Positions 16,077 through 53,333 are shown, counted from the stretch's first letter. The stretch is 64,000 nucleotides of DNA from Haliotis rubra (GCF_003918875.1 NW_025766956.1:558001-622000), one strand, 5' to 3'. Notes: generated from the sequence alone by a model not told the origin. Numbers and translations: made by a program.

Positions 16077-19000
16077 ATGTTGCAGCTTTTCGTAGCAGGT
16101 CTGGTGGCGGCAGCCGTTATTGTCGAGTCTGCCGGTAATTCGTTTATGTCGACTGTAGAGTCTGTTAGGGAAAACCAAGTTCTATGGATAGTCAACTTCT
16201 TTATTGCAATGAGTGCGACGTTTCGGTGCAGGTACTAACACCGTTATCATCACCGTTACCTACTATTAATTCCAGAGGTAGCAATACACCGTTCTGAACT
16301 GATGACCCTTGAGCAAATGAGATTACTAATTCTGTAAAGTTAAATGGATTCTTCAAACACTGACAATCACAATTCGTTATTATTTTTTGTTAACGATATG
16401 AACAGGAAAAATGTTGATATCAGCTCGGCGGGTTTTTGAGTTGTATATTCATGTTTACAAATGAACATTTGCTTTGTTTTATGGTATACTATTTTATTGG
16501 ACACTATAACTTGATGGATGGTTTACTGTTGATTTACATTCATGTTGACACGTTCTTAAGCGGGTTTTTTCAAGAACTGGTGACCTGTTATCAAACGTGA
16601 ACCAAGGTAAATAGAACGTCTTGACAGAACCGATTCCTAGGAAACGCTTATCATGTACCTCTGTATATAATGGCACCCAGAGACACCCATCATTGGACCT
16701 ACATTGGATTAACACGAAATCCCAATACATTTTATGATTGGATTGTTCCAACACAGTACTTCACTTCTTTCCAGATGTAGTTTGTCAAATATATATAAAT
16801 GTTTCATATTCTCCCTGCTACCAGATGTGTGCCCGACTGACCCCCCGGGCCTGGTGTATGCGTGTGCCAATAGGCCACAGTGTTTGGGGGACAGGTCCTG
16901 CGGGTCAGGTCACAAGTGTTGTCCCCACATCTGCGGCTCCCGATGTTTCCAGACAGGTAGGTGTATGTGTTCAGATGGGTAGGTGTGTGTGTTCAGGTGG
17001 GTAGGTGTATCTGTTCAGATGGGTAGGTGTATGTGTCCAGATGGGTAGATGTATGTGTTAAGATGAGTAGGTGTATGTGTCCAGATGTGCAGGTGTATGT
17101 GCTCAGATGGGTAGGTGTATGTGTCCAGATGGGTAGGTGCATGTCCAGATGGTTAGCTGCATGTGTTCAGGTGGGTAGGTGTATCTGTTCAGATGGGTAG
17201 GTGTATGTGTCCAGATGGTGTATGTGTGGTAGGTGTATGTCCAGATGGTGTATGTGTCCAGATGTAGGTGTGTCCAGATGGGTAGGTGTATGTGTCCAGA
17301 TGGGTAGGTGCATGTGTTCAGATGGGTAGGTGTATGTGTCCAGATGGGTAGGTGTATGTGTTCAGATGGGTAGGTGTATGTGTCCAGATGGGTAGGTGTA
17401 TGTGTTAAGATGGGTAAGTGTATGTGCTCAGATAGTAGGTGTATGTGTTCAGATGGGTGTGTGTATGTGTCCAGATGGGTAGGTGTATATGTCCAGATGG
17501 GTAGGTGTATGTGTCCAGATGGGTAGGTGTATGTGTCCAGATGGGTGTGTATGTGTCCAGATGGGTAGGTGTATGTGTCCAGATGGGTAGGTGTATGTGT
17601 CCAGATGGGTAGGTGTATGTGTCCAGATGGGTAGGTGTATGTGTCAGATGGGGGTGTATATGGTGTAGGTGTATGTGTTCAGATGGGTAGGTGTATGTGT
17701 TCAGATGGGTAGGTGTATGTGTCCAGATGGGTAGGTGTATGTGTCAGATGCAGGTGTATCAGATGGGGTGTGTATGTGTCCAGATGGGTAGGTGTATGTG
17801 TCCATACGTGTTCCAGACAGGTAGGTGTATGTGTCCAGATGGGTAGGTGTATGTGTCCAGATGGGTAGGTGTATGTGTCCAGATGGGTAGGTGTATGTGT
17901 CCAGATGGGTAGGTGTATGTGTTCAGATGGGTAGGTGTATGTGTCCAGATGTGTAGGTGTATATGTGTCCAGATGGGTAGGTGTATATGTCCAGATGGGT
18001 AGGTGTATATGTCCAGATGTGTAGGTGTATGTGTCCAGATGGGTAGGTGTATGTGTCCAGATGGGTAGGTGTATGTGTTCAGATGTTAGGTGTATGTGTC
18101 CAGATGGGTAGGTGTATGTGTTCAGATGGGTAGGTGTATGTGTCCAGATGGGTAGGTGTATGTGTTCAGATGGTTAGGTGTATGTGTCCAGATGGGTAGG
18201 TGTATGTGTCCAGATGTGTAGGTGTATATGTTCAGATGGGTAGGTATATGTGTTCAGATGTGTAGGTATATGTGTTCAGATGGGTAGGTGTATGTGTCCA
18301 GATGTGTAGATGTATGTGTCCAGATGGGTAGAAGTATGTGTTCAGATGGGTAGATTTATCAGCATACCATACCAATATGAGTATTGTGTATATGGGGATG
18401 GATTACTGTGTGTAACAACAAACGGGGTCATATATTGGTCTGAAACAGCAGTATGATTTCAGATTTAGAAATGAAACAGGAAGTCATCACTATCTGGTGT
18501 TAAGATTGTATTATGTACGCTTGTAACCAGATGATATAGTACACCCGTTCGTGTCTTTTCCAGTTCACTGCGACCCGATCGACTGCGGTTCTCTCACGTG
18601 TAACTACGGCTTCCAGCCAGACAGTCGAGGTTGCAAGTCGTGCACCTGCAGGACATGTACGTTACGTTCCACATGTGATGAGTGATTGATGGAGTTTTTT
18701 TAACGCCACAGCATTTAAGTTTTATAAAAGCTTGTCATGGTACATGCTTTCAGGGGAGGGTGATTTGTAGACGGAACGTGGCGCAGACTGACCACGGCTT
18801 ATCTGTGATTTGAACCCACGACTAACAGCTCTTGGCAGCTGTGGGGACCAAATATGTATGAAATAAACTTGAATCCCAAATTTCACCAAATCCCCTAAAT
18901 GGTTTCTCTCACATTTAACAGACCAACAAACAACAGACCCCAACTATAAGGGTCCAAGTTAGAGATGTTCCTCCCACTGAAGCACAGGAGCTGATTTAAG

Positions 19001-19526
19001 GTTATTTCCAGGGGAGACGATTAAATATATTTAACGAACATAACATGTGGGGTGATACAATGTGGTCTTTGCATCTTTCAGCAAAACCATGCACTACCGT
19101 AAGTACCCAGTATTTTCTTGTCTATTGTCTAAGGACTTTCATGTCGTGCAGTGTAATGTAAGAACACCGCTTTGAACAATATTTCCGTGTTATCATGAGT
19201 GAGAGATTAATGTCAGGGAAAGTTAGTGGTGCAAGTTATAGAAGTCATCACATTGGTGGAACTCAAGAACTCTCTATGGTGCCTACGAACGAAGGTCGTC
19301 ATCAGTACAAATGTAAGGTCAGAACCCATGATCAGATCAAATCCCGTTAGAGCTAAGGGACACAACTCTGTACGCCAATTGTGACATCAAGACCACAGAA
19401 AACATTTCTTTCATTACGTCATAAGCATGTTATATTTTGTTGTTGTGGGAAGGCATCGCATTCAGTCATGTTTCTTTCTGTTTCTCCCTTCAGTTGCTGT
19501 GTAGGCTGAGTGAAACTCTGGGATGA
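16077..19526 (+). CDS. secreted WAP + antistasin-domain protein, copy 1 (110 aa)
   Basis: Exons 16077-16134, 16825-16956, 18564-18656, 19082-19098, 19494-19526, all GT-AG with consistent phase. MLQLFVAGLVAAAVIVESA-DVCPTDPPGLVYACANRPQCLGDRSCGSGHKCCPHICGSRCFQT-VHCDPIDCGSLTCNYGFQPDSRGCKSCTCRT-SKPCTT-LLCRLSETLG*. AATAAA at 19563. Confidence 0.9.
16957..18355. repeat. 22-bp minisatellite in intron 2 of copy 1
   Basis: Unit CCAGATGGGTAGGTGTATGTGT, ~60 units, starting at the exon-2 donor. Confidence 0.95.
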
Positions 19527-20564: not shown

Positions 20565-21243
20565 CGTACCAATTTCAATGATAAGTCTCTGAACACAAGG
20601 TCAATCTTCATGGGCGACAATGCCATGCCAACTATGCAGTTGATGATTTCCTGCGTCAAGAGGCAGTAGACACACAACCTTGGCCCGCTGGGGAGTCCCA
20701 GATCTCAATCTCATTGAGCATGTTTGGGAATACGTCGGTGAGATCCGCAGTACAAAATCTTGATTTATTGGAACAAGCCTTCCATCAAGAATTGAACGCA
20801 ATACCTGAACGTCAAATTCAACGTCTGATACATTCAGCGAGGAGAAGGGTCAGACATGTTATAATACTTGGAGGAGGTTACACCGGATATTGACACTGTG
20901 CTCAGTTACTGAACATTATGTGATTTCTTGAGGATTGTACGCAAGAATCTTGAAAATTGTCGCACTTTTTAACGCCTTTCGACCATTATTATCAGCATTA
21001 CAAAGAGAGTAATTTTTGCAAAGTTTGCTTATTGAATAAACTACATTTTATTACTCACTGAGACTTTATGCAGAAGGTAAGCAAAATTGAGGTTTGGATA
21101 GTTGGTTAGCTGTTTTAACGCCCGCATTCAGCAATATTCCAGCTATATGGTGGTGAGGTTTAGATAAGTTCATTTGCTTTAGTTATTGGTAACATTTTGA
21201 TGCTATGAAAATATGTGGTGTTGCGATACTTTGTTCATGTGTA
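20565..21243 (+). mobile_element. Tc1/mariner 3' fragment
   Basis: IFMGDNA and PDLNLIEHVW motifs; absent from the paralogous flank after copy 3 (~42415). Confidence 0.7.
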
Positions 21244-21463
21244 TATCGTACATTTCTTGAAAATATCCAAATATATTTTAAGTCAACAAGCTATTTCTGT
21301 ATAGATAAGTCTTAAACTACAGGGCAGTGACAATCATTACTAGAATAATGTCAAGGTCAAATATTTGTATATTGTCTACTTCAGCTAAGATAAGATTGGA
21401 GACTTTTTGTCGACATTTAAGGTACCAACTGTATAAACCGAACACGCTGAAAAGACATTGAGG

Positions 21464-24400
21464 ATGTTGCATCTTCTGGTAGCAGGACTGGTTGCGACAG
21501 TCGTTATTGTCGAGTCAGCGGGTAATTATTTTTGACTTTTGTTTAATGTACTGTGTCTATTGTAATGTGTCTGTTGTACCGACTTCATTGTCAGAGGTGT
21601 GCTAAGGGAACTATCGCATCTATTGGGTAAACACGGCGAATGGCGAGGCATTTGCATACGTGTGGGTGACTACTTCCGGTGTAGATTTATGACTTCCTAT
21701 TTTAGGAATCATCTTTTTTCTGAACAACGGAACGGTTTTATCAGATTGGCATGTATTTATTGATATGGAACGAATAGTACTACATTTATCCATAAAGAAT
21801 GTCTATATTGAAAATATGTATCCTGTATCAATTCATGGACGGTTGGTGGTGGGGTAGCCGATTGGTTATAGCATTCGGTTTCGAATCCCCACATGGGTAC
21901 AATGTGTGAAGGCCATTTCTCGTGTTGCCCACCGTGATATTGCTGGAATATTGCGGACAGCGACGTACGACTAAAAAGTACTCACTTGACGAAATTTCTT
22001 TGTTTTGTTGTTGTTGTTGTTTGTGTTTGTTTTGTTGTTGTATTTTGGGTTTTTTTGTGATGTTTTTGGGGTGGGTGTGTGTGGGTGGGTTTGAACTCCG
22101 AGGTTATAGCTAGGTGTTCAGGTGAACTTTCGAATCACCCAGTCATCCCTTCTATATTATTGATATGAGTGAGCTAAACATTCAAACCTGCATATCTGAT
22201 TATTGTATTTCGAAAAGAAGTAACCCGGTTTGTTCCGTATGTAAAAGATAAATGTCATGCGATTGTATGTTTCATGACATTAACATTTGTTTCTATGTTA
22301 TTGGAGAATCTTTAATACAAACTGACTGGTGAACTTTTGATCGAGACTGTCACTCGGTGTTAGTCTGCATTCCTTCTCACATGTTCTGAAGGGTAATGTG
22401 GCCAAGAAACGTGAACTGTTATCACCGTGAAGGAAGGTAGGTTGGATGTCTCTTTAGAAATGCAGATTCCAAGAAAGGAGTAAAACGTAAAAGAAATATA
22501 AAGCGCACTCTTTAACACATAAGTTAATTCGGCATTCACACATGCGGCTCACTTGAAATGACTTTCTGGGTCAGATGATAACTTTCATAAGTCCAATTTA
22601 TCATCCCACTTAGCCTGGAACCACTAGCTGCTTAAGTTTCGTTAATGAAGTGACGTCACCATCTCAACCTCTCTCAACCGCACAAATCTTACCCCGCTCA
22701 TGAATGTAAGTTGATTCGACGGCTATTTATAGTGCCGTGGAAATTGGATAGTCCACAATACAAAGATATTGTACTGGCTTGTTATTTTACAACGGAAGAA
22801 CGATATATACCTAGGATAACAGACGACGAGGATCTATGCCTCCATCTGTAATATTCCCATTGTTCTCCCCATGAAACTCATTGAGTAATCGCCAACAGAC
22901 TAAATACTGAAGGATAATACAAAGTCCAACAGATGATGTATGTAGATCACCCGAAGCTTATTGAAATGGACATCTTCTGTCACTGATTGGAATGATAGGA
23001 GCCCTGTTGTCATATATAAACACCTGTAAACGTGTATATTAATCCCAGTCAAAATGGGTCTTGTTTGTCTGGTCAAAACCATGTTATATCAACGTTGCTC
23101 CTTCCAGACGTGTGTCCGACTGACCCACCAGGCACGGTGTATGCGTGTATTTACATGCCCAAGTGCTTCGCAGACGGGACCTGTGGAGCAGGGCAGAGGT
23201 GTTGTCCTCACATCTGCGGCGCCCACTGTGTGACAATTGGTAGGTACATGTGTTCAGATAATCAGGAACATGTATCCCGACAGGTAGGTGTCCAGGTAGG
23301 TGATACATGATCATGGCGCCTCGTACTGGCTTCGACCCGTGAAGGTCCGGGTTAGAATATTGATTTTCAGTAACCCATGCTTGTCGTAAGACGCGACTAA
23401 CGGGATCGGGTGGTCAGGCTCGCTGACTTGGTTGACAAATCTCACCGGTTCCCAGTTGCGCAGATCGATGCTCATGTTGTTGATCACAGGATTGTCTGGT
23501 CCGGACTCGATTATTTACAGACCGCCGCCATATAGCTGGAATACTGCTGAGTGCGGCGTGAAACTAAACTCACTCACTCACTCGTACTGGCTTAGAAAAC
23601 GTGGAACTACTTGGAGGAATTTATTAGTATGTTGCTATGAAACAGTTTCAGAACTAGTAAAGTTATCACTATCCTGTATTAAACATTTTTTATGTACGTT
23701 TGTAAACAGATGATATAGAACACCCCTTACTTGTCCTTTCCAGTTCACTGCGATCCGATCGACTGCGGTTCAGTCACGTGTACCTACGGCTTCCAGCCAG
23801 ACAGTCGAGGTTGCAAGACGTGCACCTGCAGGACATGTACGTTCCGAATGTGACGAGTGATTGGTGACGTTATTGTAATCCCGCCGCATTGCATTTATGC
23901 ATTAGCATATCAGGGTGAATGGTATAGGGGAAGGTGATTTGAAGACAGACCACGGCTTATCTGTGATTTGAACCCACGACTAACAGCTCTTGACAGCTGT
24001 GTGGACCCTACATATGTGCAATAATTTTGAACACTAAATTTCACAATTTCTCAAAAATGGCTTCTCTCACTTTTAACAGACCGCCTCCGAGGTGTAGTGG
24101 TTAGAGCGTCCGCCCGGAGAGCAGAAGGTCGCGGGTTCGATCCCCGACCGCGTCAAACCAAAAGACGTTAAAATATGGTACTTGTTGGTCCCTGTCTGGC
24201 ACTCGGCATTAATGGGTACATCAAGAACTGGTCGGCTCAGAGTCAGTATAATGTGTCTGAGTGGGGTATTCATGCTTCACTGCGGCATGGTATCTAAGTG
24301 GGCTAGCACTATAAAACCAGCTTAAGTCTGGGCTAGTACAAGCAGCCGCACATACACATACAGTCATACACATGCATGCACGTCGTCATATGAGCGAAAT

Positions 24401-25619
24401 TCTCAAGCACGACGTAAAACCCACTTTCACCTCGCCTTTTAACACCGATTGACAGAAACTACAACAGACCCTAACTATAAGGATCTACACTTGGGGCGTT
24501 CCTCCCGCAGAAGTTAATTTAAGGTTATTCCAAGGGGAGACGATTATATAATCATTTCATGAATATATCCATAAGGACTTGTACTGGGCAATTAAACTTT
24601 TGTTTTTTCCTTTTTCAGCAAAACCATGCACTACCGTAAGTACTTATTTCCCACTTGGTTCTGAACACTTCTAGTACAGTGTAATAACAGGAGGAAATTG
24701 ATTTAACGCCTCTTTGAACACTAATTTTGTTATATCAGAGGTGCCATCAGCAGAGCTACGCGACACAGCAAATTGTGGAACGAAGACCACAAGTGTCCCT
24801 TTGGAAGAAACAATTATCATAATTTACTCTGACGTATTGCATATTTCCTTTCATTAAGCCACACCCCGTGGAGATTCCGGCTCAGCATAGGCCCTCATCA
24901 ATGTGTGGGTCGTAAGAGGCGAATAACATGTCAGGTGGTCGGATGGATGCGATTATTTACAGGCCGCTGTCACAAAGCTGGACCATATCTTGTTTTGGTG
25001 TTAAACAACATTACATAAAAAACAAAACAACACCCCACCATACAAACACGCACAGTCACATGCACAGGCCTACCATAAAAACGGTTAACAAATCCTCAAA
25101 ACTGAACTCATATACACCAGAACAGAACAAAAGTCACCAAACTAGGAAAATAAACTTCCAAAACTGCAACAATTTCCTCTAAAACCGAAACAAACGCATC
25201 TGTAATGGAAACTAATCGTTGGAAATGGAAACAAAACTTGCGTATCAGGTACAAGAGCGCCCAAGAACGGTCGCCGAGCGTACAAAACGGCGGTCATAGC
25301 ATCCCAAAACGGCAGTCATAGCATCCCAAAACGGCATAAAAATCGTCAAAGATGGCGGCGCGTGGAGACGAACAGGTTTTGGTAAATAATGGGTCTAATC
25401 ACTATGGGTCTAATCTTGAAAATTTGATATCGGGATGATATAGCGCATCAACCCCCTATTAAAGTAAGCTTCAAACCTATGTCCATACTTCTCAGTGTCA
25501 GGCTTGCGATTCTGCACAATGTGGTCCCTTGTATGGTAAGCCTGATGCGTATATCTTTTATTCATCCTTCTGTCTGTTCCCTTCAGTTGCAGTGTCTCCT
25601 GAGTGGATCTCTGGGATAA
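21464..25619 (+). CDS. secreted WAP + antistasin-domain protein, copy 2 (110 aa)
   Basis: Exons 21464-21521, 23108-23239, 23744-23836, 24619-24635, 25587-25619. MLHLLVAGLVATVVIVESA-DVCPTDPPGTVYACIYMPKCFADGTCGAGQRCCPHICGAHCVTI-VHCDPIDCGSVTCTYGFQPDSRGCKTCTCRT-SKPCTT-LQCLLSGSLG*. AATAAA at 25696. Confidence 0.9.
23334..23580 (+). mobile_element. family B retroposon in intron 2 of copy 2
   Basis: Full length, GACCC start, TSD CTCGTACTGGCTT. Confidence 0.85.
24079..24436 (+). mobile_element. SINE family C in intron 3 of copy 2
   Basis: TSD CTTTTAACA; empty site visible in the paralogous introns of copies 1 and 4. Confidence 0.88.
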
Positions 25620-27857: not shown

Positions 27858-30800
27858 ATGTGGCAGCTTTTAGTAGCAGGTCTGGTGGCCACGGCCGTCA
27901 CTGTCGAGTCTGCCGGTATTTTTTTATGTCTATTGTAGAGTGTGTTGTTTAGGAGATAAACATACTGTGTTGGAAAATCAGAGGTGTATAACGAAATTAT
28001 AATAGCTCTAAATTTGATTTAATACCGAACGCGTAGCGTGAGGTTTTAAATAAAAAACATTTAGAGCTATTATAATTTCGTTATATACCTCTGATTTTCC
28101 AACACAGTACGTTTATCTCCATTCTACCATGACCGGGTTATTAAGATTTTGCAAAAATACATACTGTGTTGGAGAATCAGAGGTATATAACGTGATTATA
28201 TACCTCTGAATGACTTTGATTAACAAATCCCAATCCAGTATTTACTGAAGTCATGGTAGAATTATTCAATACAACTTCAGGTTGTAAATTGATACGGGAG
28301 TTGTCCACCTTTGTCCATGCACATGTCCACGTGTCTCGTGTTGCCCCATGTAGCGAAGTACGGAATGTTGGAAACTCTTCTGTTAAAGGTCACATAAACC
28401 CTAGGGGGTACAAATACATAAATCACTAACTGGCATCGTTATAAATGAAACCCCGTCATTAAAACTACTCATTTCGACCTTTAATTGACTTAAATCGACC
28501 TTTTTTGACAACAGTGCACAATTCTCACCCGCGAACGAAATTTCAACCAATCAGAGCGGCGCGCCTCTGTGACGTCATATGAGGAATAGCTTTGAGAGCC
28601 GATGCAGAATTCATCTACATTTTAGGGGGTAAATTATCGTGTTTACAGGCTTGAATAACCTGAAATCGTGACAATTGTTGTGGAAAATGAAAGCTATATG
28701 TTCTCACAATCTACTGTCATTTAATTTTGTCTCCTGCTTTGCCTAGTTTCCGAGTTACAACTTGTTTTCATAGACGATTCTGTCAAAATCGATTGGTGTC
28801 GTTAGGCCCTATTTGTATAATGACTGATCCAAATTGATCCCATTTCTGTGTTGTTTTACCTCGATATTTAATCATGTCATGTAAAAATCTGTTTGTATTC
28901 TCAAAACAGTGTCGGCCCATAAGTTTTCACATGCAATACAGCAATTAATACTCCCTTGTTGTAACCCGTGTTAGGTGGTATAAACCTACACATGTTATTT
29001 GTCATCATTCACTTGATGGTCAGTTAATGAATTATAACAGGTATAATTAGTGGTAACACACTTAGATTACCCGACAAAGGTTCCCATTTGGCATTTCTTG
29101 TGTCTGGAGTAAATATTCAACATTATAAACATCGATCAAAGGATTAACCGATAACACGCTGATTGATTAATTACTTTTATCTTACACAGCGGAATTGTCA
29201 AAAGGTAGTGTTTATGTATGTAGATTTACTAATCTATACTGAATACACTCTGTCGTGTCGGTGTCTGCGTAAAAACAACGTCCTTCTTTCAAAGGATTAA
29301 CCGGCAATACATTGATTGATTGCCCATTATTGGCTAACTAAATTACTGTTTTTAAAGAAAGGCGGACATTATGCAATTAGTTGCCAGGTGTGCTATCTTG
29401 GGTGACCAATGAGACTATACACCAATACCTGAAAAGATTGATCACTTTTTCGTATATTAAACTGTTAAAAGACACATCATTTGGAACAGTTTTGTGGATA
29501 TTGATGGATACATTCCTCGAACAAGGTAATGGCCTGATATTGTTCCTATAACTTTAATCTGTTTTAATTTTAATATTTGCATTTTGTTTTATTCATTTGT
29601 CGTAGCATTCAACAGAATCATTGTTTTCGCCGTGAAGTGTAATGAGACAGACAACATGCACTAGGTGTGTGTGTGCGAATTATGATTCACATTGGCAAAC
29701 TATAAAATGTCTAGATATTACAGTTCTGTTATAAATTCACTATAAGTATCAGCAGATCGTCTGCTTTTTATTTAGTTTCAAAATGCATACAAGTGTGATA
29801 ATAAACTAATTAGGATTATAAGACCAAATATAAAGACGCACATTGACTAGTATCTACATACTGGTGAGTGGACATTAACCATGGAATGTAGCAAGAAATT
29901 TATCGCGCAGTATTGTGACTTCGACCCCACCTCGCTTCCGTGGAAGAAATCGTTATGTTATAAGTTGTGTCATGCAAAATCCGTTTGGTTATGATTCCAA
30001 TACATATTTAACAACGAGTAGAAAGTAGTCTTGATTTTCTAACTTGATGAAAACAAACTATAATCTCATTAATTCTAACAGATTTTTATTTTTAAAAATG
30101 GCGGCGCACTTCTGTCGGGAACATCCGCCAGTCTGAGGATAAATGGTATTTAGGTTTGTTTTCACCGAGTTACAAAATCAAAACTACTTTCTACTGGTAG
30201 TAAAATATGTATTTTATTGATGGCCAATAGGATTTTGCATGACATAGCGTATATCATAACAATTTCTCTCGTGGCAGCGAGGTGGGTGTCAATATAATAC
30301 TACTTACAATATTATTATTACTTCGACCACAACCTCACTTCCGAGGAAGAAATCGTTATGTTACAAGTTGTGTCATAGAAAATCTTTATGGTCATCAATC
30401 ATATGCATATTTTACTACAACTAGTAAGTAGTTTTGATTCTTTAACTTCCGTGAAGCGATCTGAACACAAGTAAGATATCGTTTCAGGCTTCCACAACGC
30501 TCGCTTCGCACTCACAAACATAACCCATTTAGCACGAACTGCGGGTCCTGTGGAAATCTGTGCATGGGGACACCATCGCCCGACCCTAGGAGCAATTGAC
30601 GACAAAGCAACGATTCGGCATGTCGTCGTTGATGTCGAGAAATCATCAAAATGATGAGCGTGCTACACATTTTCTATACAACTAACTGAAAATCGTTCCT
30701 CATATGACGTCACTGCAGCGCTCTGGCGACAGAGTTACGTAACCTGTCTGTGGTTTCGTTGGCGGGCGAGAGGGAAGCAGGCGACTTTTTGGCCACTTTT

Positions 30801-42913: not shown

Positions 42914-45900
42914 ATGTGGCAACTTTTAGTAGCAGGTCTGGTGGCGACGGCCGTTATTGTCGAGTCTGCCGGTAATTCTTTTATGTCTATTGTAGAGTCT
43001 GTTGTTTGTTATTGTCCGTGTGTAAATGTGTATCATGTGGCATCGACTGGGTAAAGTAAACACTTAATTTACAGGGCCATGCTTTCAATGTTGTTTCTTT
43101 TCAGAACTTCTTTACAAATGGACCGGGAAGTTACTTTGTTAATTTCAATTTAAATGTACTTGTACAACACATTCCGAGGCAAAAGTGTTTTGGTAGCAGC
43201 TTGTAGACGAGGTACAGGCCAATGACTGTTTCAGTGTCTCCGTCTCATCATTGTCACAAAATGTCTACCACGTTTTCAGAATTGGAACATCTTGATAAAA
43301 CTAAAAACTGGTACAATTAACAAAATAACGAAAATGTGTAAAATGTACATGTAACAAATCGCCAAAGATTGCCGACAAAATTAGCATTGCACGAGAATGT
43401 TTTCGTACAATAAAGCATAAACCCTGCCCTCTTAACCACATACGTAAGAAAAATAAAATGAATGAAGTTATTCAAAATGTTATGTGAACACAGACACATT
43501 TAGAAGAGAATGTGGCCTGTGGCCTCGTAAATGCTGATTGACTGATTGAATTTCATGTCTCAACGAAACAATGCCATTGGCCATTTGGAGGTTGGTGACT
43601 GTTTGTCAGAAGTCAGAAGGCCACTGAATCTCCCAGGAAGACTTTGGCACCTTCAGAGGTGAAGAAATGGATGTTGTCGCCATCAGTGGTTGTGAGTTAA
43701 GTTGGGCTTCACGTCACATCGGCATTATTCCAGCCATATAGTGACGAGATCAAGTCTGCATTCATAAACATTGTAGGTCCAAAGTCCAAATAAGTTTTAC
43801 TTTGAAACATATATATTCATTACATTATTATTTTAAAAAAGAAAGCACCAAATTCAAAAGCAGGCAATTCGTTATTCACATTACATAGTTACAATTTATG
43901 ATACAGGTCGACTTCCCTCAGGTAGTTACACCAGGAGAGGACTGTTGTTGGAGGACAGAGAGATTGACATGACATGACATGACATGACAAGACATGACAG
44001 GAGGGATATGGAGGCGACGTAATGAATGTTTGGCAGATAGATTTGAAGTGTTGTCAGTCATCTCTTACACTGGAAAAAGCCTTTCTACACGTCCCTGGCA
44101 AGTACCGTTGGTTACCGTAACGAAATCATTGGTCTATTTATGTATTAGTCACGTCCTTTTCAACCCTGCAATGCCTGACTGCTATTGAATGTCACCTGTT
44201 CGTGTTCTTGTTATTCCTGTTCTTCCATGACCATCCATATCACCTGATTTTAAGTCAAAGAAGATGTGTAAGAGGAACTTGTAAAACAACTTAAGCCTGA
44301 GGACATTGCATGACGTGTTTTCGGTCTTACAGTAGAATGGAAAAACACTCCCTGACTGTTTTTGTGGAATCTTATGGATTCGAAGGGTTGGCCAGTCATC
44401 ACTTCCTGTGCTTGTCATATGCGACATTGGAGGAGTATTTGCAAACTTTTGTGCATGTTGGAAAGGAAATGAGCTGCTCGAATGTCAATGAATTCAGCTA
44501 CTGGTTTCCTTTTGGAGTGAAGTAAAACTTTGTTTTCATGACAAAAGTGACCGCGTTAATTTATATACATGCTGTCGTGTTCTGAAGGATACGTTCTTTG
44601 AGAACTTGCCAGAACTGCATGGATTCATGGGGAATATGACACCTTTTCACTACTGGGGATGATGATATTCGCACCTCAACATGCAATTTTTTTGCCCTCT
44701 GGATTATAGTCATCATCTAGCAAATCAGTGACTGCTCACCTGGAAACAATCATAATAGCCCGACTGTTGTTAACGTGTTAGGGGTACAGCACAACAGCGT
44801 GTCTTACTTTGCCATCAGTATTGTTTATTCCAGATGTGTGTCCGACTGATCCCCCGGGAATGATATATGGGTGTGCCTACATGCCCAAGTGCTTCGGGAC
44901 CTGTGGGGCAGGACAGAGGTGTTGTCCTCACATATGCGGCGACCGTTGTGTGACAATTGGTAGGTAAATGTGTTCAGATACTTCCAGACAGTATGTGCAT
45001 GTGTTGCGATGGGTGGGGCTTGTGTTCGGACTTTAGTAGACCGCCTCCGTGGTGTAGTGGTTAGAGCCTCCGCCCGGAGAGCGGAAGGTCGCGGGTTCGA
45101 TCCCCGGCCGCGTCATACCAAAAGACGTTAACATATGGTACTTGTTGGTCCCTGCCTGGCGCTCGGCATTAATTGGTTCAACATGGACTGGTTGGCTCGG
45201 AGTCAGTATAATGTGTCTGAGTGGGGTATCCATGCTTCACTGCGGCGTGGTATCTCAATGGGCTAGCACTATAAAACCAGCTTAGGTCTGGGCTAGTACA
45301 AGCAGCCGCACATACACACGCACACGCATGCACGTCGTCATATGAGCGAAATATTCTCAAGCACGACGTTAAATCCAATTTCACCTCACCTCACCTCAGA
45401 CTCTAGTACTTTTTACTCTGGTAGGTACATGTGTTGTGATGGGTGGTACATGTGTCCAGATAGGTAGGTTATATTTATATGTTATATTTAGGAGATAAAC
45501 ATATAATGTTGGAAAATCGGAGGTATATAACGAAATTATAATAGTTCGTTATATACCTCTATTATACCTCTGATTTTCAATACAGCATGTTTATCTCCAT
45601 TCTACAATACCGCTTTATTAAGATTATTAAAAAAAAATACACACTGTGTTGGAATATCTGAGGTTTATAACGTGATTATATACCTCTCAATGACTTACAT
45701 GAACCAATCACAGTCCAGTATATACTGAAGTCATGGTAAAATTAGGGTTAGGTATGGTTTCTCATTGAACTACAAACTCTAATCTCAGCCGGATTTTAAC
45801 CCACACTCCCAGAGGCAGGCACCTAAAAGCCAGTACTCAAAGGCACCGATCAATCCCACTCAATCCCACGACTCCCACAAAATATATAATATGTTAAATC

Positions 45901-47182
45901 GCCACAAGCCTTTATTAAGCTTGTGTTATGTACGCTTGTAAAAAGAGAATAAAAAACATATTTCGTGTCATTTCCAGTCCACTGCGATCCGATCGACTGC
46001 GGTTCACTCACGTGTAACTTCGGCTTCCAGCCAGACAGTCGAGGCTGCAAGACGTGCACCTGCAGGACATGTACGTTACGTTTCAAATGTTATGAGCGAT
46101 TGATGGAGTTTATTTTAACGCCACAGCTTTTCAGTTCTGTAATGGCGTGTCATGGTACCTGGTAATAGGGGAAGGTAATTTGTGTGGAGCGTAGGCGGAA
46201 TGTGGCGCCGACAAACCAAGACTTTTCTGAGATTTGAACTCACAACTATCAGCTCTATGCTGTGGGGACGGCATAGAAGTCCAATAATGATGAACACCAA
46301 ATTTCACCATATCTCCAAAATGGCATTTCTCACTTTTAACACAGACCGAAAGAAACTACAACAGACCCCAACTATAAGGATGTAAGTTAGGGATGTTTCC
46401 CCAACGACAGTTGATGAATGGTTTCCAGAGGGGACGATTATATAATTATTTAATGAATATAACATGTGGCGTTGTTCTGGGTGATTATATTTTGTCTTTG
46501 TGTATCTTTCAGCGAAACCTTGCACTACCGTAAGTACCTATTTCATGTCTGGTACTCAACATACTCTAAACACTTCTTGTACTGTGTAATGAATGAAGGA
46601 AATTGATTTAACACCCCTTTGAGCAATATTTCAGTTTTATCAGAGGTGTCAGATAAAAGTCAAAGATCACCACATCTCAGGTGACACGACAAATTGTGGA
46701 ACGAAGACCACAAATGTCCCTTTTGAAGAAACAATTTGAAGAAACTCATTGCATATTTCCTTTCATTAAGCCCCATCTCATGGAGATTCCGGCTTGGAAT
46801 AGGTCAACATCATCCGAGGTCATCGCAAATACATGGGCCCAGATGCGATTATTTACAGGCCGCTGTCAGAAAGCTGGACCATATCTTGTTGCGGTGTAAA
46901 ACAACATTATTTTAAAAAAACAACTCACACACCAGCATGCAAACACGCACAGTCACAGGCAGATACCCTTTGATTATCATTCATCCTTCTGTCTTCTCCC
47001 TTTAGTTGCAGTGTCTCCTGAGTGGATCTCTGGGGAAGCCTCGCGCCTGTATGTTGGTAGACAGTATACACAGCCCGTCGTGGTTGAAGCCCCGCGCCTG
47101 TATGTTGGTAGACAGTATACACTGCCTCGCGCCTGTGTTGGTAGACAGATACACAGATATACACAGCCCGCGCCGTGGTTGA
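42914..47182 (+). CDS. WAP + antistasin protein, copy 4 (2-aa deletion in WAP; stop lost, reads into minisatellite; 156 aa as assembled)
   Basis: Exons 42914-42971, 44834-44959, 45978-46070, 46513-46529, 47006-47182. WAP exon DVCPTDPPGMIYGCAYMPKCFGTCGAGQRCCPHICGDRCVTI; last exon LQCLLSGSLG-KPRACMLVDSIHSPSWLKPRACMLVDSIHCLAPVLVDRYTDIHSPRRG*. Confidence 0.8.
45039..45396 (+). mobile_element. SINE family C in intron 2 of copy 4
   Basis: Full length; imperfect TSD GACT(T/C)TAGTA; empty site in copy 5 (~51567). Confidence 0.88.
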
Positions 47183-48799: not shown

Positions 48800-51700
48800 A
48801 TGTTGCAGCTTTTAGTAGCAGGTCTGGTGGCGACAGCCGTTATTGTCGAGTCTGCCGGTAATTCTTTTATGTCTGTTGTAGAGTCTGTTGTTTGTTATTG
48901 TCCGTGTGTCGATGTGTATCATGTGGCATTGACTGGGTAAAGTAAACACTGAATTTACAGGGCCATGCTTTCAATGTTGTTCTTTTCAGAACTCTTTTAC
49001 AAATAGACAAGTTACATTGTTAATTCAAATTTAAAAATAAATAATTACAATGACAAAAATTAATCATATGCAATTGTACATCATGTTACATCAACTCATT
49101 CCGATGAAAAATTGTTTTGGTGGCAGCTTGTTGCTGAGGTGAGGGCCAATGAATGTTTTCAGAATTTGAACATTTTGTTCAAACTAAAAACTGGACAAAT
49201 CACAACAAACTACATTGTTAATATCAATATTAATATTAAAAATTACATTGACGAAACAGTTATACAATTATTCAACATGCTATATCGACACATTCAGAAG
49301 AAACGCTGTTTTAGTGGCAGCTTGCAAGCGAGGTTGAGGCCAGGAAGCATTTATCAGTACTCACTTCTCCGTCCCACTTTTGTTACAAAATTTCAGAATT
49401 TAACATTTTTTTAATTTAAAGAAAAACTTGACTACTAAACCATAACAATAATGTGTAAAATGTACATGTAACAAATCGCCAAACATTGCCGACAAAATTA
49501 GAACTGCACGAGTGTTTTTGTACAATAACGCATAAACCCTCCCCTCTCAGCCACATACCTATTACAAATAAAATGAATGAAATTATTTCTGAATGTTATG
49601 TGAACACAGGCAAATTTAGAAGAAAATGAATACTCGTTTGAATGCAATATCAGTTCAATAGTTCCAATTACATATATTTCACTATTGTTTTGTATCGATT
49701 ACTACTTAACTGCTTGGTCCATTCATGTACCAATGTCACGTCCTTTTTCAACACTACAATGCATTACTACTGTCCTTGTTCTTCCTATTCCTGTTCTACA
49801 ATGGCCATCCATATCCCCAGATTTTAAGTCAAAAGAACATATCTAGGAGGAACTTGTACGATAACGTAAACCCGAGGCGCAGACACTGCAGGACTTGCAA
49901 TAGAGTGGAAAAACATCCCCTAACTGTTTTTGTGGATTCGAAGGGTTGGCCAGTCATCAATTCCTGAGCTTGTAAATGCGACATTGGAGGAATATTTGCG
50001 AAACTTTCATGTATTGGAAAGGAAATGAGCTGCTCGAATGTCGTTGAATTCAGCTACTGGTTTCGTTTTGGAGTGGAGTAAAACTTTGTTTTCATGACAT
50101 CATGGTGATCGTTTGGGATGTTCCAATTTCGCCTACATCCCATTTCGCCGAACGAAATTGAGGATGGCAACTCATCCGCCCCTCATTCAGTGAATGGGAT
50201 GGCCCACATTTCCTGCTCAGTGTCTCCAAAAGAATATGTTCACTGTTTTGTTTTGTTATTTTATTAATTAAAGTGGTTTGTTGCTTAATAATGCAAATTA
50301 CTGTAATAGGTTTGAGATCAAAGTCACTTTATATCTATGTTGATAAGATTTGTTGTTTTAATAAAGCCTTAATAAAGTGGCTACTCTCAGGCTTCCTGCT
50401 CAATGTGCAATGTTGTTATGTTCTCTTCCCCGTGTACTGTTGTTTGAATGTACAGTATGTAAGGGATGTGAAATGTTGGTTGTGATGTCAAAATGGCAAA
50501 CGCATTTCTTCAGAGAGTAGAATTTATTACGACACAGAGAGGCGGGCAGCAAGTTCTATATGATGGATATCGCTATCGACTAAATGTGAAACGTCAGTCT
50601 CGAGCTGAGGTTGATCTGCAAGAACCTTGGACTCAGACCCTAAATGGCGACCAGTTCCTGTGCATCGACGACGGTGTTGACGACAAGCTGCTCGTATTTG
50701 CTACAACTGATATGCTAGATATTCTGAGTGAGGCAGTGACCCTGTACATGGATGGTACTTTCTTCACATGTCCCAGTTTGTGGGCGCAGGTTTACATTGT
50801 GCATTGATTGTATGGTGGACGAGAAAATGTACCCTGTTTCATTTACTTTGCTGCCAAATAAAACCAAACAGACTTATGTGAGACTTTTTACTCTGTTGAA
50901 GAACACCACTGAGACCGTTACCGGTACGGTACCATCGCCAGAAGTAATCCAGACTGATTTTGAAGCTGCCGTCATTAGTGCCATTGCAGAAGTGTTCCCT
51001 GAGTCGTCACCCCTCTAGGGGTTGTGACAACACTGAAAGAGTCTGCACACAAAGTTGACTCCAAGCTTTTTACACCTGGTCACAGGTGGGCTCGATCTCA
51101 AGATCGCTGGATCACTAGCCTGGCGCTTTAGCCTGTTCGCCCACCACGCTCACGTGATAACCTTGCATTACTTGGGATGATGATATTCTCACCTCAATAT
51201 GCAATTTGTTTTTGCCCTCTTGATTAAAGTCATCACCAAGCAAACCAGTGAGTGATCACCTGTAGCAGTCATAATAGTCCGTCTGTTTCTCAACTTGTTA
51301 GGGATACAGCACAAACCATCTCGTGTCTTTCTGTTTCATCAGTACTGTTTATTCCAGATGTGTGTCCAACTGATCCCCCGGGAATGGTATATGGGTGTGC
51401 CTACATGCCCAGGTGCTTAGGGTCTGGGACCTGTGGGGCAGGGCAGAGGTGTTGTCCTCACATATGCGGCGACCGTTGTGTGACAATTGGTAGGTAAATG
51501 TGTTCAGATACATTGTACTTCCAGACAGTATGTGCATGTGTTGCAAATGGGTGGGGCTTGTGTTCAGACTCTAGTACTTTTTACTCTAATAGGTTCATGC
51601 GTTGAGATGGGTGGTGTATTTGTCCAGATAGGTAGGTTCTTGTGTTATATTTGGGGTTACGTACGCTTTCTCACTGAAGTACAAACTCTAATCTCAGCCG

Positions 51701-53333
51701 GATTTGAACCCATACGGTCAGAGGCAGGCACCTAATCTCCAGCACTCAAAGGCAGCGATCTTACCCACTCAACCACCACGACGTCCACAAAATATAACAT
51801 ATGTTAAGTCACCACAAGCCTTTATTTGGCTTGTGTTATGTACGCTTGTAAGAAGTGAATAAAAACACCTTTCTTGTCATTTCCAGTCCACTGCGATCCG
51901 ATCGACTGCGGTTCTCTCACGTGTAACTACGGCTTCCAGCCAGACAGTCGAGGCTGCAAGACGTGCACCTGCAGGACATGTACGTTATGTTTCAAATGTT
52001 ATGAGCGATTGATGGAGTTTATAATTACGCCACTGCATGCATTCCAGTTTTATAAAGGCTTGTCAGGGTACATGATATTAGGCATGGTGGTTTGTGTAGA
52101 GCGTACTCGGAACGTGGCTTATCTGAGATTCGAACTCACGACTATCAGCTCTTGGCATATATCAATAATCATGAACATCAAATGTCCCCCCTATCCCCGA
52201 AATGGCTTCTCTGACTTTCAACACAGAAACTACAACATACCGCATAAGGATCCAAGTTAGGACTGGGAATGTTTCTCCTGCGGTAGTTGATTTATGGTTT
52301 CAAGGAGAGACGACTATATCATTATTTACTGAAATTTATTGATTGATTGTTGCTTAACGCCGCACTTATTTAATGAATATATCCTTTAGGAGTTATACGG
52401 GGCAACTAAACTTTCGTCTTTCGTCATTTGTATCTTTCAGCAAAACCCTGCACTACTGTAAGTACCTATTCTGTATCTCGTAGGCAAAACACTCTAATGG
52501 ANNNNNNNNNNNNNNNNNNNNNNNNNNNNNNNNNNNNNNNNNNNNNNNNNNNNNNNNNNNNNNNNNNNNNNNNNNNNNNNNNNNNNNNNNNNNNNNNNNN
52601 NNNNNNNNNNNNNNNNNNNNNNNNNNNNNNNNNNNNNNNNNNNNNNNNNNNNNGCATAAATATACCCCCAAAAAAAAACACAAAAAAAACAAACAAAACA
52701 AACAAACAAACAAAAAACCACTTTAGTGACCCTGCCCTGCATGTCATGTACAAAATCAATTAAAATCATCGTCATCCCTCCAAGCCATAAATTATGAACG
52801 GTCGCTAAAGTTATACAGTACAGTGTAAAAAAAGAGTTAACCCAACACCCTTTGAACAATATCTCCGTTTTATCAAGGGTGAAAGATTGTCACCACTCGC
52901 CCCTTTCCGTAACGCTATTCGGCTTGTCCCGGAATAACACGAGTTGGTCACGAATGGTCAGAACTCATGATCATCATTTCCCGGCAGAGGGACACATCAC
53001 ACAGCAAATTGTGGCTCCAAGACTACAAAGGCACCCGTGTCCATTACGTGAAAAGCATGTTTTTGGAGTGAGTGAGTGAGTTTAGTTTTACGCCGATTTT
53101 AGCAATATTCCCGCAATATCACCAGAAATGGGCTAAACACATTGTAACCATGTGGGGAATCGAAACAGGGTCTTCGACGTGACGAGTGAACACTTTTAAA
53201 CACACACGCACACACGCACGCGCGCACACACACACACACACGCACACACGCACACACCCTGCTGTTGTTGATTTATCCTATTTTCTGTTTCTCCCTTCAG
53301 TTGCTATGTAGGATAAATGAAGCTGTGGGATAA
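48800..53333 (+). CDS. secreted WAP + antistasin-domain protein, copy 5 (110 aa; intron 4 spans the N gap)
   Basis: Exons 48800-48857, 51358-51489, 51887-51979, 52441-52457, 53301-53333. MLQLLVAGLVATAVIVESA-DVCPTDPPGMVYGCAYMPRCLGSGTCGAGQRCCPHICGDRCVTI-VHCDPIDCGSLTCNYGFQPDSRGCKTCTCRT-SKPCTT-LLCRINEAVG*. AATAAA at 53392. Confidence 0.87.
50115..51018 (+). mobile_element. truncated MULE/Mutator transposase (FLYWCH-like + MULE domain)
   Basis: Left terminus GGGATGTTCCAATTTCGCCTACATCCC; GGQQVLYDGYRY, YMDGTF, LLPNKTKQTY and TDFEAAVISAIAEVFP in two frameshifted ORFs. Confidence 0.85.
51019..51152 (-). mobile_element. 5' fragment of a further tRNA-like SINE
   Basis: Minus-strand head GAGCGTGGTGGGCGAACAGGCTAAAGCG..GAGATCGAGCCC resembles degenerate A/B boxes. 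Confidence 0.45.
52502..52653. other. assembly gap (152 N)
   Basis: Run of N. Confidence 1.

What the first reader, a model, noticed from the sequence alone, without database searches (positions are those of the whole stretch)
16077..53333. Hidden tandem array of five micro-exon genes encoding secreted WAP-antistasin hybrid proteins
Seen: five co-oriented genes with the same exon plan (58/132/93/17/33 nt), intact splice sites and, in four, a nearby AATAAA. All 16 Cys are invariant while the introns have been heavily remodelled by TEs. Established: C-x10-C-x5-C-x5-C-x5-CC-x3-C-x3-C is the WAP four-disulfide core (elafin/SLPI, crustins, abalone perlwapin), and C-x4-C-x4-C..GF..D..GC-x2-C-x-C is the antistasin repeat. 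Each domain sits on its own phase 1-1 exon, the signature of exon shuffling. Inference: a lineage-expanded family of double-headed protease-inhibitor, antimicrobial or shell-matrix proteins. I do not recognise this compact 1 WAP + 1 antistasin family as a named gene.
Basis: partly seen in the sequence, partly recalled or inferred. Interest (0 to 1): 0.88.

Follow-up and report, generated by a model that had tools for sequence, protein, structure and literature searches.

The report
Abalone WAP-antistasin inhibitor gene cluster
Five neighbouring genes of the blacklip abalone each encode a small secreted, cysteine-rich protein with one WAP domain and one antistasin-like domain, probably protease inhibitors of mucosal defence; the genes are real but are already in the public annotation, so the finding is correct and fairly ordinary.

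Summary
The window is Haliotis rubra DNA. It carries five co-oriented genes with a 58/132/93/17/33-nt exon plan and canonical GT-AG at all 20 introns. Each encodes a hydrophobic N-terminal leader, one WAP domain, one antistasin-like domain and a tail with two Cys.

Copy 4 deviates. Its WAP exon is 126 nt and scores below the Pfam cut-off. Its stop codon is lost, so the ORF runs 47 codons into a minisatellite.

The assembly gap (52502-52653) lies inside intron 4 of copy 5, and its flanks are collinear with an uninterrupted H. rufescens intron.

The genes are not "hidden". All five models are letter-for-letter RefSeq proteins carrying misleading automatic names.

The same compact protein and exon plan, including the 17-23-nt micro-exon, occur in a chiton and a limpet; Lottia has the same protein architecture. 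H. rufescens has three tandem copies beside CDC37.

Pairwise dN/dS is 0.16-0.38. Variation is concentrated in the WAP loop that aligns with elafin's binding loop.

Three small RNA runs gave no exon coverage, so expression is untested. Larger WAP+antistasin proteins are already known from sea cucumber, sea star footprints and limpet shell and mucus. The scan's earlier notes on this same stretch (s1-320440, s1-320467) broadly agree with my checks.

Verdict: an uncharacterised member of a known kind, of modest interest.

The parts
16077..16134 (+). copy 1 exon 1 (ATG plus hydrophobic leader, 58 nt)
   Evidence: the whole model equals P0001 / XP_046573662.1
16825..16956 (+). copy 1 exon 2, WAP domain, phase 1-1
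   Evidence: Pfam WAP 29.8 bits; splice sites
18564..18656 (+). copy 1 exon 3, antistasin-like domain, phase 1-1
   Evidence: Pfam Antistasin 29.6 bits
19082..19098 (+). copy 1 exon 4, 17-nt micro-exon (carries Cys 15)
19494..19526 (+). copy 1 exon 5 coding part (Cys 16 and stop); AATAAA at 19563
21464..21521 (+). copy 2 exon 1
   Evidence: the model equals P0065 / XP_046573661.1
23108..23239 (+). copy 2 exon 2, WAP
   Evidence: Pfam WAP 30.4 bits
23744..23836 (+). copy 2 exon 3, antistasin-like
   Evidence: Pfam Antistasin 31 bits
24619..24635 (+). copy 2 exon 4, micro-exon
25587..25619 (+). copy 2 exon 5 coding part; AATAAA at 25696
27858..27915 (+). copy 3 exon 1, followed by a 9.5-kb intron holding an RT fragment at 35470-36312
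   Evidence: the model equals P0069 / XP_046573663.1
37431..37562 (+). copy 3 exon 2, WAP
   Evidence: Pfam WAP 30.5 bits
40273..40365 (+). copy 3 exon 3, antistasin-like
   Evidence: Pfam Antistasin 28.9 bits
40783..40799 (+). copy 3 exon 4, micro-exon
41195..41227 (+). copy 3 exon 5 coding part; AATAAA at 41264
42914..42971 (+). copy 4 exon 1
   Evidence: RefSeq model P0064 / XP_046573686.1 (156 aa)
44834..44959 (+). copy 4 exon 2, WAP with a two-codon deletion (126 nt)
   Evidence: Pfam WAP only 13.3 bits, cut-off 20.8
45978..46070 (+). copy 4 exon 3, antistasin-like
   Evidence: Pfam Antistasin 31.6 bits
46513..46529 (+). copy 4 exon 4, micro-exon
47006..47182 (+). copy 4 exon 5 without the ancestral stop; the ORF runs 47 extra codons into the 51-nt minisatellite (47035-48309) and stops at 47180-47182
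48800..48857 (+). copy 5 exon 1
   Evidence: the model equals P0002 / XP_046573664.1
51358..51489 (+). copy 5 exon 2, WAP
   Evidence: Pfam WAP 23.5 bits
51887..51979 (+). copy 5 exon 3, antistasin-like
   Evidence: Pfam Antistasin 32.4 bits
52441..52457 (+). copy 5 exon 4, micro-exon
52502..52653 (.). assembly gap, inside intron 4 of copy 5 (not coding)
   Evidence: flanks collinear with the H. rufescens orthologue intron and with c1 and c3
53301..53333 (+). copy 5 exon 5 coding part; AATAAA at 53392
16943..18353 (+). 22-nt minisatellite in copy 1 intron 2; it starts inside exon 2 and repeats the exon 2 donor (42 copies of GGTAGGT)
37594..39968 (+). 43-nt minisatellite in copy 3 intron 2, related to the copy 1 array (25 copies of CAGGTAGGT)

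Best explanation
This is a tandem array of five paralogous protein-coding genes of Haliotis rubra, lying next to CDC37.

Shown here:
- Each gene has five exons.
- Each encodes a 110-aa precursor made of a hydrophobic N-terminal leader, one WAP four-disulfide-core domain, one 6-Cys antistasin-like module and a 16-residue tail with a C-x4-C pair. The tail is encoded by a 17-nt micro-exon plus the last exon.
- The gene is ancient in molluscs. The same protein and the same exon plan occur in a chiton and a limpet; Lottia has the same protein architecture.
- In abalone it was amplified to 3-5 tandem copies that have exchanged segments. Copy 3 is a chimera of a c4/c5-like 5' half and a c1-like 3' half.
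- The coding sequence is under purifying selection, except for a hypervariable stretch of the WAP domain.

Inferred:
- The products are secreted, disulfide-rich, canonical-type serine-protease inhibitors acting in mucus or haemolymph defence.
- The WAP Cys2-Cys3 loop region is the diversified protease-binding 'warhead'. After duplication the copies diverged there, so the array covers several target proteases.
- The conserved antistasin module has Gly/Ser/Leu where leech inhibitors have the basic P1 residue. It is therefore not a factor Xa or trypsin-type head. It either targets proteases that prefer small or hydrophobic P1 residues, or serves as a stable scaffold.
- Copy 4 is probably decaying: WAP deletion, lost stop, no poly(A) signal.
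For: Gene models: 20 of 20 introns are GT-AG and all five models equal RefSeq proteins exactly.

Domains: Pfam WAP 23.5-30.5 bits in 4 of 5 copies and Antistasin 28.9-32.4 bits in 5 of 5, all above the cut-offs.

Selection: whole-CDS pairwise dN/dS is 0.16-0.38.

Conservation:
- Chiton 67/132/90/17/45 nt and limpet 58/129/93/23/45 nt share the exon plan.
- Three H. rufescens genes are 58/132/93/17/33 nt and sit beside CDC37.
- The Lottia protein has the same architecture, including the C-x4-C tail.

Hypervariable loop:
- Residues 29-44 have mean entropy 1.07, against 0.2-0.5 elsewhere.
- Their pN/pS is 0.85, against 0.30 for the rest of WAP and 0.34 for the antistasin exon, and exceeds 1 in the recent pairs c3-c4 and c3-c5 (0 synonymous and 3 nonsynonymous differences in c4-c5).
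- phmmer aligns Ala34 with elafin's residue directly after Cys2, which is P1 Ala24 from my own knowledge of elafin.

Antistasin loop: alignments to antistasin and bdellastasin place Gly72 opposite the Arg/Lys that follows the second Cys.

Chimera.

Context from the literature:
- They are also found in limpet pedal mucus (PMC7333891), sea-star footprints (PMC9382459) and Lottia shell matrix (PMC3374290).
Against: No transcript evidence was obtained. Contigs of three small RNA runs of the same species gave zero depth on c1 exons 3-4 and c2 exons 1-3 and showed no gene-model junctions.

No signal-peptide predictor was available, and residue -3 of the assumed cleavage site is Glu.

The AlphaFold model is poor (pLDDT 61). 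The Foldseek hits to SLPI, elafin and omwaprin are not significant (E >= 0.3).

The WAP loop is 3 residues shorter than elafin's, and the first loop is longer, so the P1 assignment is uncertain.

Elevated loop pN/pS could reflect relaxed constraint rather than diversifying selection. The loop window was chosen after looking at the data.

No inhibitory or antimicrobial activity has been shown for any member of the compact family.
Confidence: 0.6

Rival explanations
1. They are shell-matrix proteins. Secreted by the mantle and occluded in nacre or the prismatic layer, they would modulate CaCO3 growth or protect the matrix, like perlwapin and the Lottia WAP/antistasin matrix proteins.
For: Lottia shell matrix holds abundant proteins with WAP arrays interrupted by antistasin-like domains, and perlwapin is an abalone WAP nacre protein (PMC3374290).
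Against: Those proteins are large and multi-domain (85-103 kDa; perlwapin has several WAP domains). No shell-proteome hit for this family turned up: a search for the Lottia member's ID found no paper. The proteins here show no acidic or repetitive low-complexity region. Tissue of expression is unknown.
Confidence: 0.12
2. They are components of pedal or adhesive mucus whose main role is structural: stable disulfide-rich units that stabilise or cross-link mucus through the two tail cysteines, rather than inhibit enzymes.
For: A secreted WAP+antistasin protein (P-vulgata_12) occurs in limpet interfacial adhesive mucus. Sea-star footprint proteins Sfp3, Sfp8 and Sfp15 carry both domains. The tail C-x4-C pair is conserved from chiton to abalone and resembles the first two Cys of the next antistasin sub-domain in gigastasin, so these Cys might pair between molecules.
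Against: P-vulgata_12 is 219 aa and its sequence could not be compared, so its relationship is untested. Its authors themselves favour a protective inhibitor role. An even Cys count (16) allows fully intramolecular pairing.
Confidence: 0.13
3. They are antimicrobial peptides of the waprin/crustin type that act on bacterial membranes without inhibiting proteases.
For: The nearest language-model clusters are WAP families, and structural hits include omwaprin and nawaprin. RefSeq names one H. asinina member 'waprin-like'.
Against: These hits are weak: atlas scores are <= 0.83 and Foldseek E >= 0.3. The automatic names carry no experimental weight.
Confidence: 0.1
4. The array is not functional: annotation-pipeline models on decaying duplicates that are not expressed.
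For: No RNA coverage in three runs. Copy 4 has a WAP deletion, a lost stop and no poly(A) signal.
Against: dN/dS is 0.16-0.38 across all pairs. All 40 splice dinucleotides are intact. All 16 Cys are kept. Exon plan and protein are conserved from chiton to abalone. RefSeq lists alternative isoforms for the H. rufescens gene; as I understand the pipeline, that normally requires transcript support.
Confidence: 0.05

Closest known systems
Unnamed molluscan orthologues: Liolophura sinensis XP_064600597.1 'antistasin-like' (116 aa), Patella caerulea KAK6170237.1/KAK6170238.1, Lottia gigantea LOTGIDRAFT_232722, and Haliotis rufescens, H. cracherodii and H. asinina RefSeq models
   Same: Same length class and the same order of leader, WAP, antistasin and C-x4-C tail. 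The five-exon plan with a 17-23-nt micro-exon is shared by the chiton, Patella and H. rufescens genes; I did not check Lottia's exon plan. In H. rufescens the genes also neighbour CDC37.
   Different: Only one copy was seen within 24 kb in the chiton and the limpet. H. rufescens has 3 copies and H. rubra 5. Outside Haliotis, and in c4/c5, the WAP loop keeps a GCAY(M/Q)P-type motif; it has diverged in c1, c2 and c3. None of these proteins is characterised.
[quoted passage not shown] 2016, pmid 27989867), and echinoderm 'prestalk protein-like' proteins
   Same: Both Pfam domains occur in one secreted polypeptide. The family profile matches adjacent WAP-antistasin units as single stretches.
   Different: 516-1132 aa with 6-15 WAP and 4-10 antistasin repeats, against 1+1 in 110 aa here. 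They lack the C-x4-C tail and micro-exon plan as far as tested. The similarity is at domain level, not orthology.
Elafin / SLPI (WAP-type canonical inhibitors)
   Same: The 8-Cys WAP core and the KCC..CG..C motif. The variable residues here align with elafin's binding-loop region.
   Different: Cys1-Cys2 spacing is 10 rather than 6, and Cys2-Cys3 is 5 rather than 8. The PDB sequence match is weak (E 0.27). No cementoin or second WAP domain.
Leech antistasin-type inhibitors (antistasin 1SKZ, bdellastasin 1C9P, gigastasin 5UBM; MEROPS I15)
   Same: The 6-Cys module C-x4-C-x3/4-C-x10-C-x2-C-x-C with the GF..D..GC motif.
   Different: Only the 6-Cys sub-domain is present, without the preceding 4-Cys sub-domain. 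The loop between Cys2 and Cys3 is one residue longer and starts with Gly, where antistasin has Arg and bdellastasin has Lys.
Lottia gigantea shell-matrix WAP/antistasin proteins (Lotgi1|201804, |239125), Patella vulgata pedal-mucus P-vulgata_12, and sea-star Sfp3/8/15
   Same: Secreted marine-invertebrate proteins that combine WAP and antistasin-like domains.
   Different: They are much larger or of different length (219 aa for P-vulgata_12). I could not compare the sequences, so the relationship is untested.

Membership tests
WAP four-disulfide core domain (Pfam PF00095) | Eight Cys in the pattern C..C..C-x5-C-x5-CC-x3-C-x3-C | tested here: met
   The regex finds it in all five exon 2 translations. 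Copy 4 has x3 instead of x5 between Cys3 and Cys4.
WAP four-disulfide core domain (Pfam PF00095) | HMM score above the gathering cut-off (20.8 bits) | tested here: met
   c1 29.8, c2 30.4, c3 30.5 and c5 23.5 bits. Copy 4 alone fails at 13.3 bits.
WAP four-disulfide core domain (Pfam PF00095) | Elafin/SLPI-like fold | tested here: inconclusive
   AF2 pLDDT is 61. The top Foldseek hits are SLPI, elafin, omwaprin and nawaprin, but with E 0.3-4.
Antistasin-like domain (Pfam PF02822; MEROPS I15) | 6-Cys module scoring above the gathering cut-off (21.2 bits) | tested here: met
   28.9-32.4 bits over the full 26-position profile in all five copies.
Antistasin-type inhibitors (leech antistasin, hirustasin, bdellastasin) | Complete ~55-residue, 10-Cys inhibitor domain (4-Cys sub-domain followed by the 6-Cys sub-domain) | tested here: not met
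   Only six Cys lie between the WAP domain and the tail. The PDB alignments cover only the C-terminal sub-domain of bdellastasin and antistasin. The 10-Cys definition comes from my own knowledge.
Antistasin-type inhibitors (leech antistasin, hirustasin, bdellastasin) | Basic P1 residue directly after the second Cys of the module | tested here: not met
   Gly72 aligns with the Arg of antistasin and the Lys of bdellastasin, and the loop is one residue longer. That these residues are P1 comes from my own knowledge.
Antistasin/WAP-like serine protease inhibitors (StmAW-SPI type) | Both domains in one secreted chain | tested here: met
Antistasin/WAP-like serine protease inhibitors (StmAW-SPI type) | Multiple alternating repeats in a protein of about 500 aa or more | tested here: not met
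   One domain of each in 110 aa here, against 6+6 in 516 aa.
Antistasin/WAP-like serine protease inhibitors (StmAW-SPI type) | Demonstrated serine-protease inhibition | not testable with these tools
   Needs recombinant protein assays.
Compact molluscan WAP-antistasin-tail family (unnamed) | Precursor of about 110-116 aa: leader, one WAP, one antistasin module and a tail with C-x4-C | tested here: met
   Alignment with chiton, Patella and Lottia proteins.
Compact molluscan WAP-antistasin-tail family (unnamed) | Five-exon plan with phase 1-1 domain exons and a 17-23-nt micro-exon | tested here: met
   Exact splice mapping in chiton, Patella and three H. rufescens genes.
Shell-matrix WAP proteins (perlwapin type) | Presence in a shell proteome; several WAP domains | not tested
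   No proteome data were searchable by sequence. The architecture differs, with a single WAP domain.

The most novel reading that the evidence does not exclude
A single-copy, mollusc-wide two-domain secreted inhibitor has kept a 17-23-nt micro-exon and a conserved WAP loop since before chitons and gastropods diverged. In abalone it was amplified into an array whose WAP binding loop is diversifying under positive selection against pathogen or symbiont proteases. In-frame skipping of the antistasin cassette exon adds WAP-only isoforms, and minisatellites built from the exon 2 donor modulate splicing.
Probability: 0.25. Interest if true: 0.45.

Novelty: new member of a known kind. Interest (0 to 1): 0.3.

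Why it matters
The finding gives a correct description, in place of misleading automatic names such as 'keratin-associated protein 9-1-like' and 'CRIM1-like', for a small secreted protein family conserved across molluscs and expanded in abalone, an aquaculture animal that suffers from bacterial and protozoan disease. If the copies are protease inhibitors with diversified WAP loops, they are candidate innate-immunity or mucus-protection genes and possible resistance markers. It is also a clean example of domain-per-exon shuffling with a deeply conserved micro-exon. It does not open a new category of biology.

Tried and rejected
- RNA support. Laying X4-X6 and X1 on 18500-24499 showed only repeat-derived contigs and no exon coverage or model junctions in the RNA runs. 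This is a negative but weak result: contigs show presence, not absence; the runs hold 53-57 Mb of contigs; the tissue is unknown; and only c1 exons 3-5 and c2 exons 1-3 were examined.
- Structure. AlphaFold2 with a 16-sequence alignment gave pLDDT 61, and Foldseek against PDB gave no significant hit. I did not use this beyond noting that the top hits are WAP folds.
- Protein atlas. It returned only generic WAP clusters at scores <= 0.83.
- P-vulgata_12. The sequence is not in the held supplement, so orthology with the limpet mucus protein could not be tested.
- Yan 2016 is not held in the library. I cite it only through PMC11310086.
- Lottia shell proteome. A search for the Lottia member's ID found no paper.
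- 'Hidden' or unannotated genes: rejected.
- Factor Xa or trypsin-type antistasin head: rejected as unlikely, because the aligned P1 position is Gly.
- The sibling note says copy 4 is fused in frame to the whole minisatellite up to 48336. This is only partly right: the ORF stops after 47 extra codons, at 47180-47182.

Full report
**What is there.** The window is 64 kb with a single N run at 52502-52653. A six-frame scan for Cys-rich open stretches found five WAP-like and five antistasin-like pieces. They alternate and all lie on the + strand. Self-comparison and fuzzy searches then located exactly five copies each of a 58-nt first exon starting with ATG, a 17-nt exon and a 33-nt last coding exon.

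The five assembled models (coordinates in 'parts') have canonical GT donors and AG acceptors at all 20 introns. Their intron phases are 1,1,1,0, so each domain exon is a symmetric 1-1 exon. They translate to 110-aa precursors:
- a leader with 13 consecutive hydrophobic or small residues;
- an 8-Cys WAP domain;
- a 6-Cys antistasin-like module;
- a tail with two more Cys.

All 16 Cys are present in all five copies. AATAAA follows the stop within about 40-80 nt in c1, c2, c3 and c5, but not in c4. A TATA/GATA-like box is conserved about 55 nt upstream of the ATG (weak evidence).

**More than chance.**
- Pfam WAP scores 23.5-30.5 bits (cut-off 20.8) in c1, c2, c3 and c5.
- Pfam Antistasin scores 28.9-32.4 bits (cut-off 21.2) in all five copies.
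- Pairwise Nei-Gojobori dN/dS over the spliced CDS is 0.16-0.38 for all ten pairs.
- Meanwhile the introns differ in length from 395 nt to 9.5 kb. They contain a reverse-transcriptase fragment, very high-copy repeats and minisatellites.

**Exceptions.** Copy 4's WAP exon is 126 nt. A two-codon deletion shortens the Cys3-Cys4 loop, and the exon scores only 13.3 bits. Its last exon has lost the stop, so the ORF continues for 47 codons into a 51-nt minisatellite and stops at 47180-47182. There is no poly(A) signal within 600 nt. Copy 4 is therefore probably decaying.

**The gap.** N 52502-52653 lies in intron 4 of copy 5, 44 nt after the exon 4 donor and 647 nt before the exon 5 acceptor. No reading frame crosses it. 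The flanks align in the same order and orientation to the uninterrupted intron 4 of an H. rufescens orthologue: left block 52428-52496, then right blocks at 52844, 52958, 53001 and 53268. They also align to c1 and c3. The join is thus consistent, though not proven.

**Identity and annotation status.** A region-restricted protein search returned a 110-aa Haliotis rubra RefSeq protein identical to copy 1. All five of my models are letter-for-letter RefSeq proteins:
- c1: XP_046573662.1, 'keratin-associated protein 9-1-like isoform X1';
- c2: XP_046573661.1;
- c3: XP_046573663.1;
- c5: XP_046573664.1;
- c4: contained in XP_046573686.1 (156 aa).

The automatic names given to relatives are also uninformative: 'antileukoproteinase-like', 'WAP four-disulfide core domain protein 18-like', 'waprin-like' and 'CRIM1-like'.

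**Relatives.** An HMM search of 1.84 billion representatives gave only 57 hits. Full-length compact relatives are in:
- other abalones;
- the limpet Patella caerulea (110 and 115 aa);
- the chiton Liolophura sinensis (116 aa);
- Lottia gigantea (110 aa).

All have the same domain order and the C-x4-C tail. Scallop relatives keep the WAP domain but have a degenerate second half.

Exact splice mapping on fetched loci shows the same five-exon plan:
- chiton, 67/132/90/17/45 nt;
- Patella, 58/129/93/23/45 nt;
- three H. rufescens genes, 58/132/93/17/33 nt.

The micro-exon plan therefore predates the chiton-gastropod split. Only one copy is present within 24 kb in the chiton and the limpet. H. rufescens has three tandem copies followed by CDC37 on the opposite strand. 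The window has five copies followed by a CDC37 C-terminal exon at 62499-62804 on the minus strand.

**History of the array.** Block-wise identities conflict. c3 groups with c4 and c5 around exons 1-2 (83-84%), yet it is 96-97% identical to c1 around exons 4-5. A 2-kb block from exon 3 to beyond the poly(A) site is 89% identical between c1 and c3. c1 and c3 also share related intron 2 minisatellites, and c2 and c4 share the 51-nt minisatellite and the same tail type. Three tail types are also present in H. rufescens. The simplest reading (inference) is an ancestral array of at least three genes, duplication of a c1-c2-like pair in the H. rubra lineage, and gene conversion or unequal crossing-over among the copies.

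Synonymous divergence is much lower in the antistasin exon (dS 0.05-0.23) than in the WAP exon (dS 0.34-1.16). This fits conversion or nucleotide-level constraint.

**How it probably works.** Variation among 11 Haliotis proteins is concentrated in residues 29-44, from just before WAP Cys2 to Cys4. Mean entropy there is 1.07, against 0.2-0.5 elsewhere, and 13 of 16 sites vary, against 32 of 75 elsewhere (Fisher p = 0.006; the window was chosen post hoc).

Summed pN/pS is 0.85 there, against 0.30 for the rest of WAP and 0.34 for the antistasin exon. The values exceed 1 for the recent pairs c3-c4 and c3-c5, and c4-c5 shows 0 synonymous against 3 nonsynonymous differences. This is suggestive, not significant.

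phmmer aligns this stretch with the region of elafin that contains its protease-binding loop. Ala34 lies opposite the residue that follows elafin's second Cys, but the loop here is three residues shorter. That this residue is elafin's P1 comes from my own knowledge.

In the chiton, the limpets and copies c4 and c5, the loop keeps a GCAYMP(K/R/N)C-type motif. c1, c2, c3 and two H. rufescens genes have diverged from it. This points to a conserved ancestral target and divergence after duplication.

The antistasin module aligns with antistasin, bdellastasin and gigastasin. However, it has Gly where those inhibitors have Arg or Lys after the second Cys, plus one extra loop residue. It also lacks the 4-Cys sub-domain of complete leech inhibitor domains. 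I therefore infer a secreted canonical-type inhibitor whose WAP loop is the variable specificity element, and whose antistasin module is not a factor Xa or trypsin-type head. Nothing about activity is shown here.

**Expression.** The three small RNA runs gave zero depth on c1 exons 3-4 and c2 exons 1-3 and showed no junctions matching the models. Only repeat segments, and a low-depth stretch at 19100-19900, were covered. Run X1 behaves as a DNA run.

Indirect support comes from the H. rufescens RefSeq isoforms:
- 79 aa corresponds to in-frame skipping of the antistasin exon;
- 129 aa to skipping of the micro-exon, with a frameshift;
- 98 aa to skipping of both.

From my understanding of the NCBI pipeline, alternative isoforms need transcript alignments. 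I could not verify that here.

**Comparison with what is known.** WAP+antistasin combinations are published:
- Lottia shell-matrix proteins;
- a 219-aa secreted protein of Patella vulgata adhesive mucus, interpreted as a protective inhibitor;
- sea-star footprint proteins.

I found no paper describing the compact 1+1 family. It is thus an uncharacterised, poorly named but annotated family built from known inhibitor modules: a new member of a known kind.

**Earlier notes of this scan on the same stretch.**
- s1-320467 (variation around WAP Cys2-Cys4, frozen antistasin exon) agrees.
- s1-320440 (copy 4 lost its stop) is confirmed, with the correction that the ORF ends after 47 extra codons.

Noticed in passing
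window 16943-18353 and 37594-39968: The intron 2 minisatellites of c1 (22-mer, about 65 units) and c3 (43-mer, about 55 units) are built from the exon 2/intron 2 junction itself. The c1 array starts 14 nt inside exon 2. The arrays carry 42 and 25 copies of the true donor heptamer GGTAGGT, so they hold many decoy 5' splice sites directly downstream of the real one. c2, c4 and c5 have the unit only once.
   Followed up: partly
window 27858-41400 (copy 3) against copies 1, 4 and 5: Copy 3 is a chimera. The blocks around exons 1-2 are 83-84% identical to c4 and c5. The blocks around exons 4-5 are 96-97% identical to c1, and a 2-kb block (18500-20564 against 40210-42415) is 89% identical. This indicates gene conversion or unequal crossing-over.
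   Followed up: partly
window 47006-48309; also 25847-26017 and 26654-26824: Copy 4 lost its stop through a deletion that joins exon 5 to a 51-nt minisatellite of about 25 units. The ORF adds 47 residues, including 3 Cys, and stops at 47180-47182. The same 51-mer lies 228 nt downstream of copy 2's stop in two short arrays of 3.4 units each.
   Followed up: yes
window 62499-62804 (- strand): A CDC37 C-terminal domain exon (Pfam CDC37_C, 39.8 bits). H. rufescens shows the same synteny, with CDC37 on the opposite strand after the last family member.
   Followed up: partly
L003 and L004 (H. rufescens), proteins P0066, P0067, P0068 and P0008: The RefSeq isoforms of one H. rufescens gene correspond to in-frame skipping of the antistasin exon (79 aa, WAP only), skipping of the 17-nt micro-exon with a frameshift (129 aa), and skipping of both (98 aa).
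   Followed up: partly
window 35470-36312 (+); 14472-15134 (+); 55260-56090 (-): A reverse-transcriptase fragment sits inside the 9.5-kb intron 1 of copy 3. ORFs with weak, sub-threshold transposase-type HTH matches (HTH_38 at 14520-14852, Tc3 transposase HTH at 55647-56081) flank the array.
   Followed up: partly
window 18564-18656 and paralogous exons: Synonymous divergence in the antistasin exon (dS 0.05-0.23) is several-fold lower than in the WAP exon of the same gene pairs (0.34-1.16). This suggests homogenisation by conversion, or constraint at the nucleotide level such as splicing signals of a cassette exon.
   Followed up: no
window 19100-19900: Low-depth contigs from RNA runs X5 and X6 (and weakly X4) cover intron 4, exon 5 and the 3' flank of copy 1, but not exons 3-4. 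Their origin is unresolved: unspliced RNA, the 96%-identical copy 3, a repeat, or DNA carry-over.
   Followed up: no
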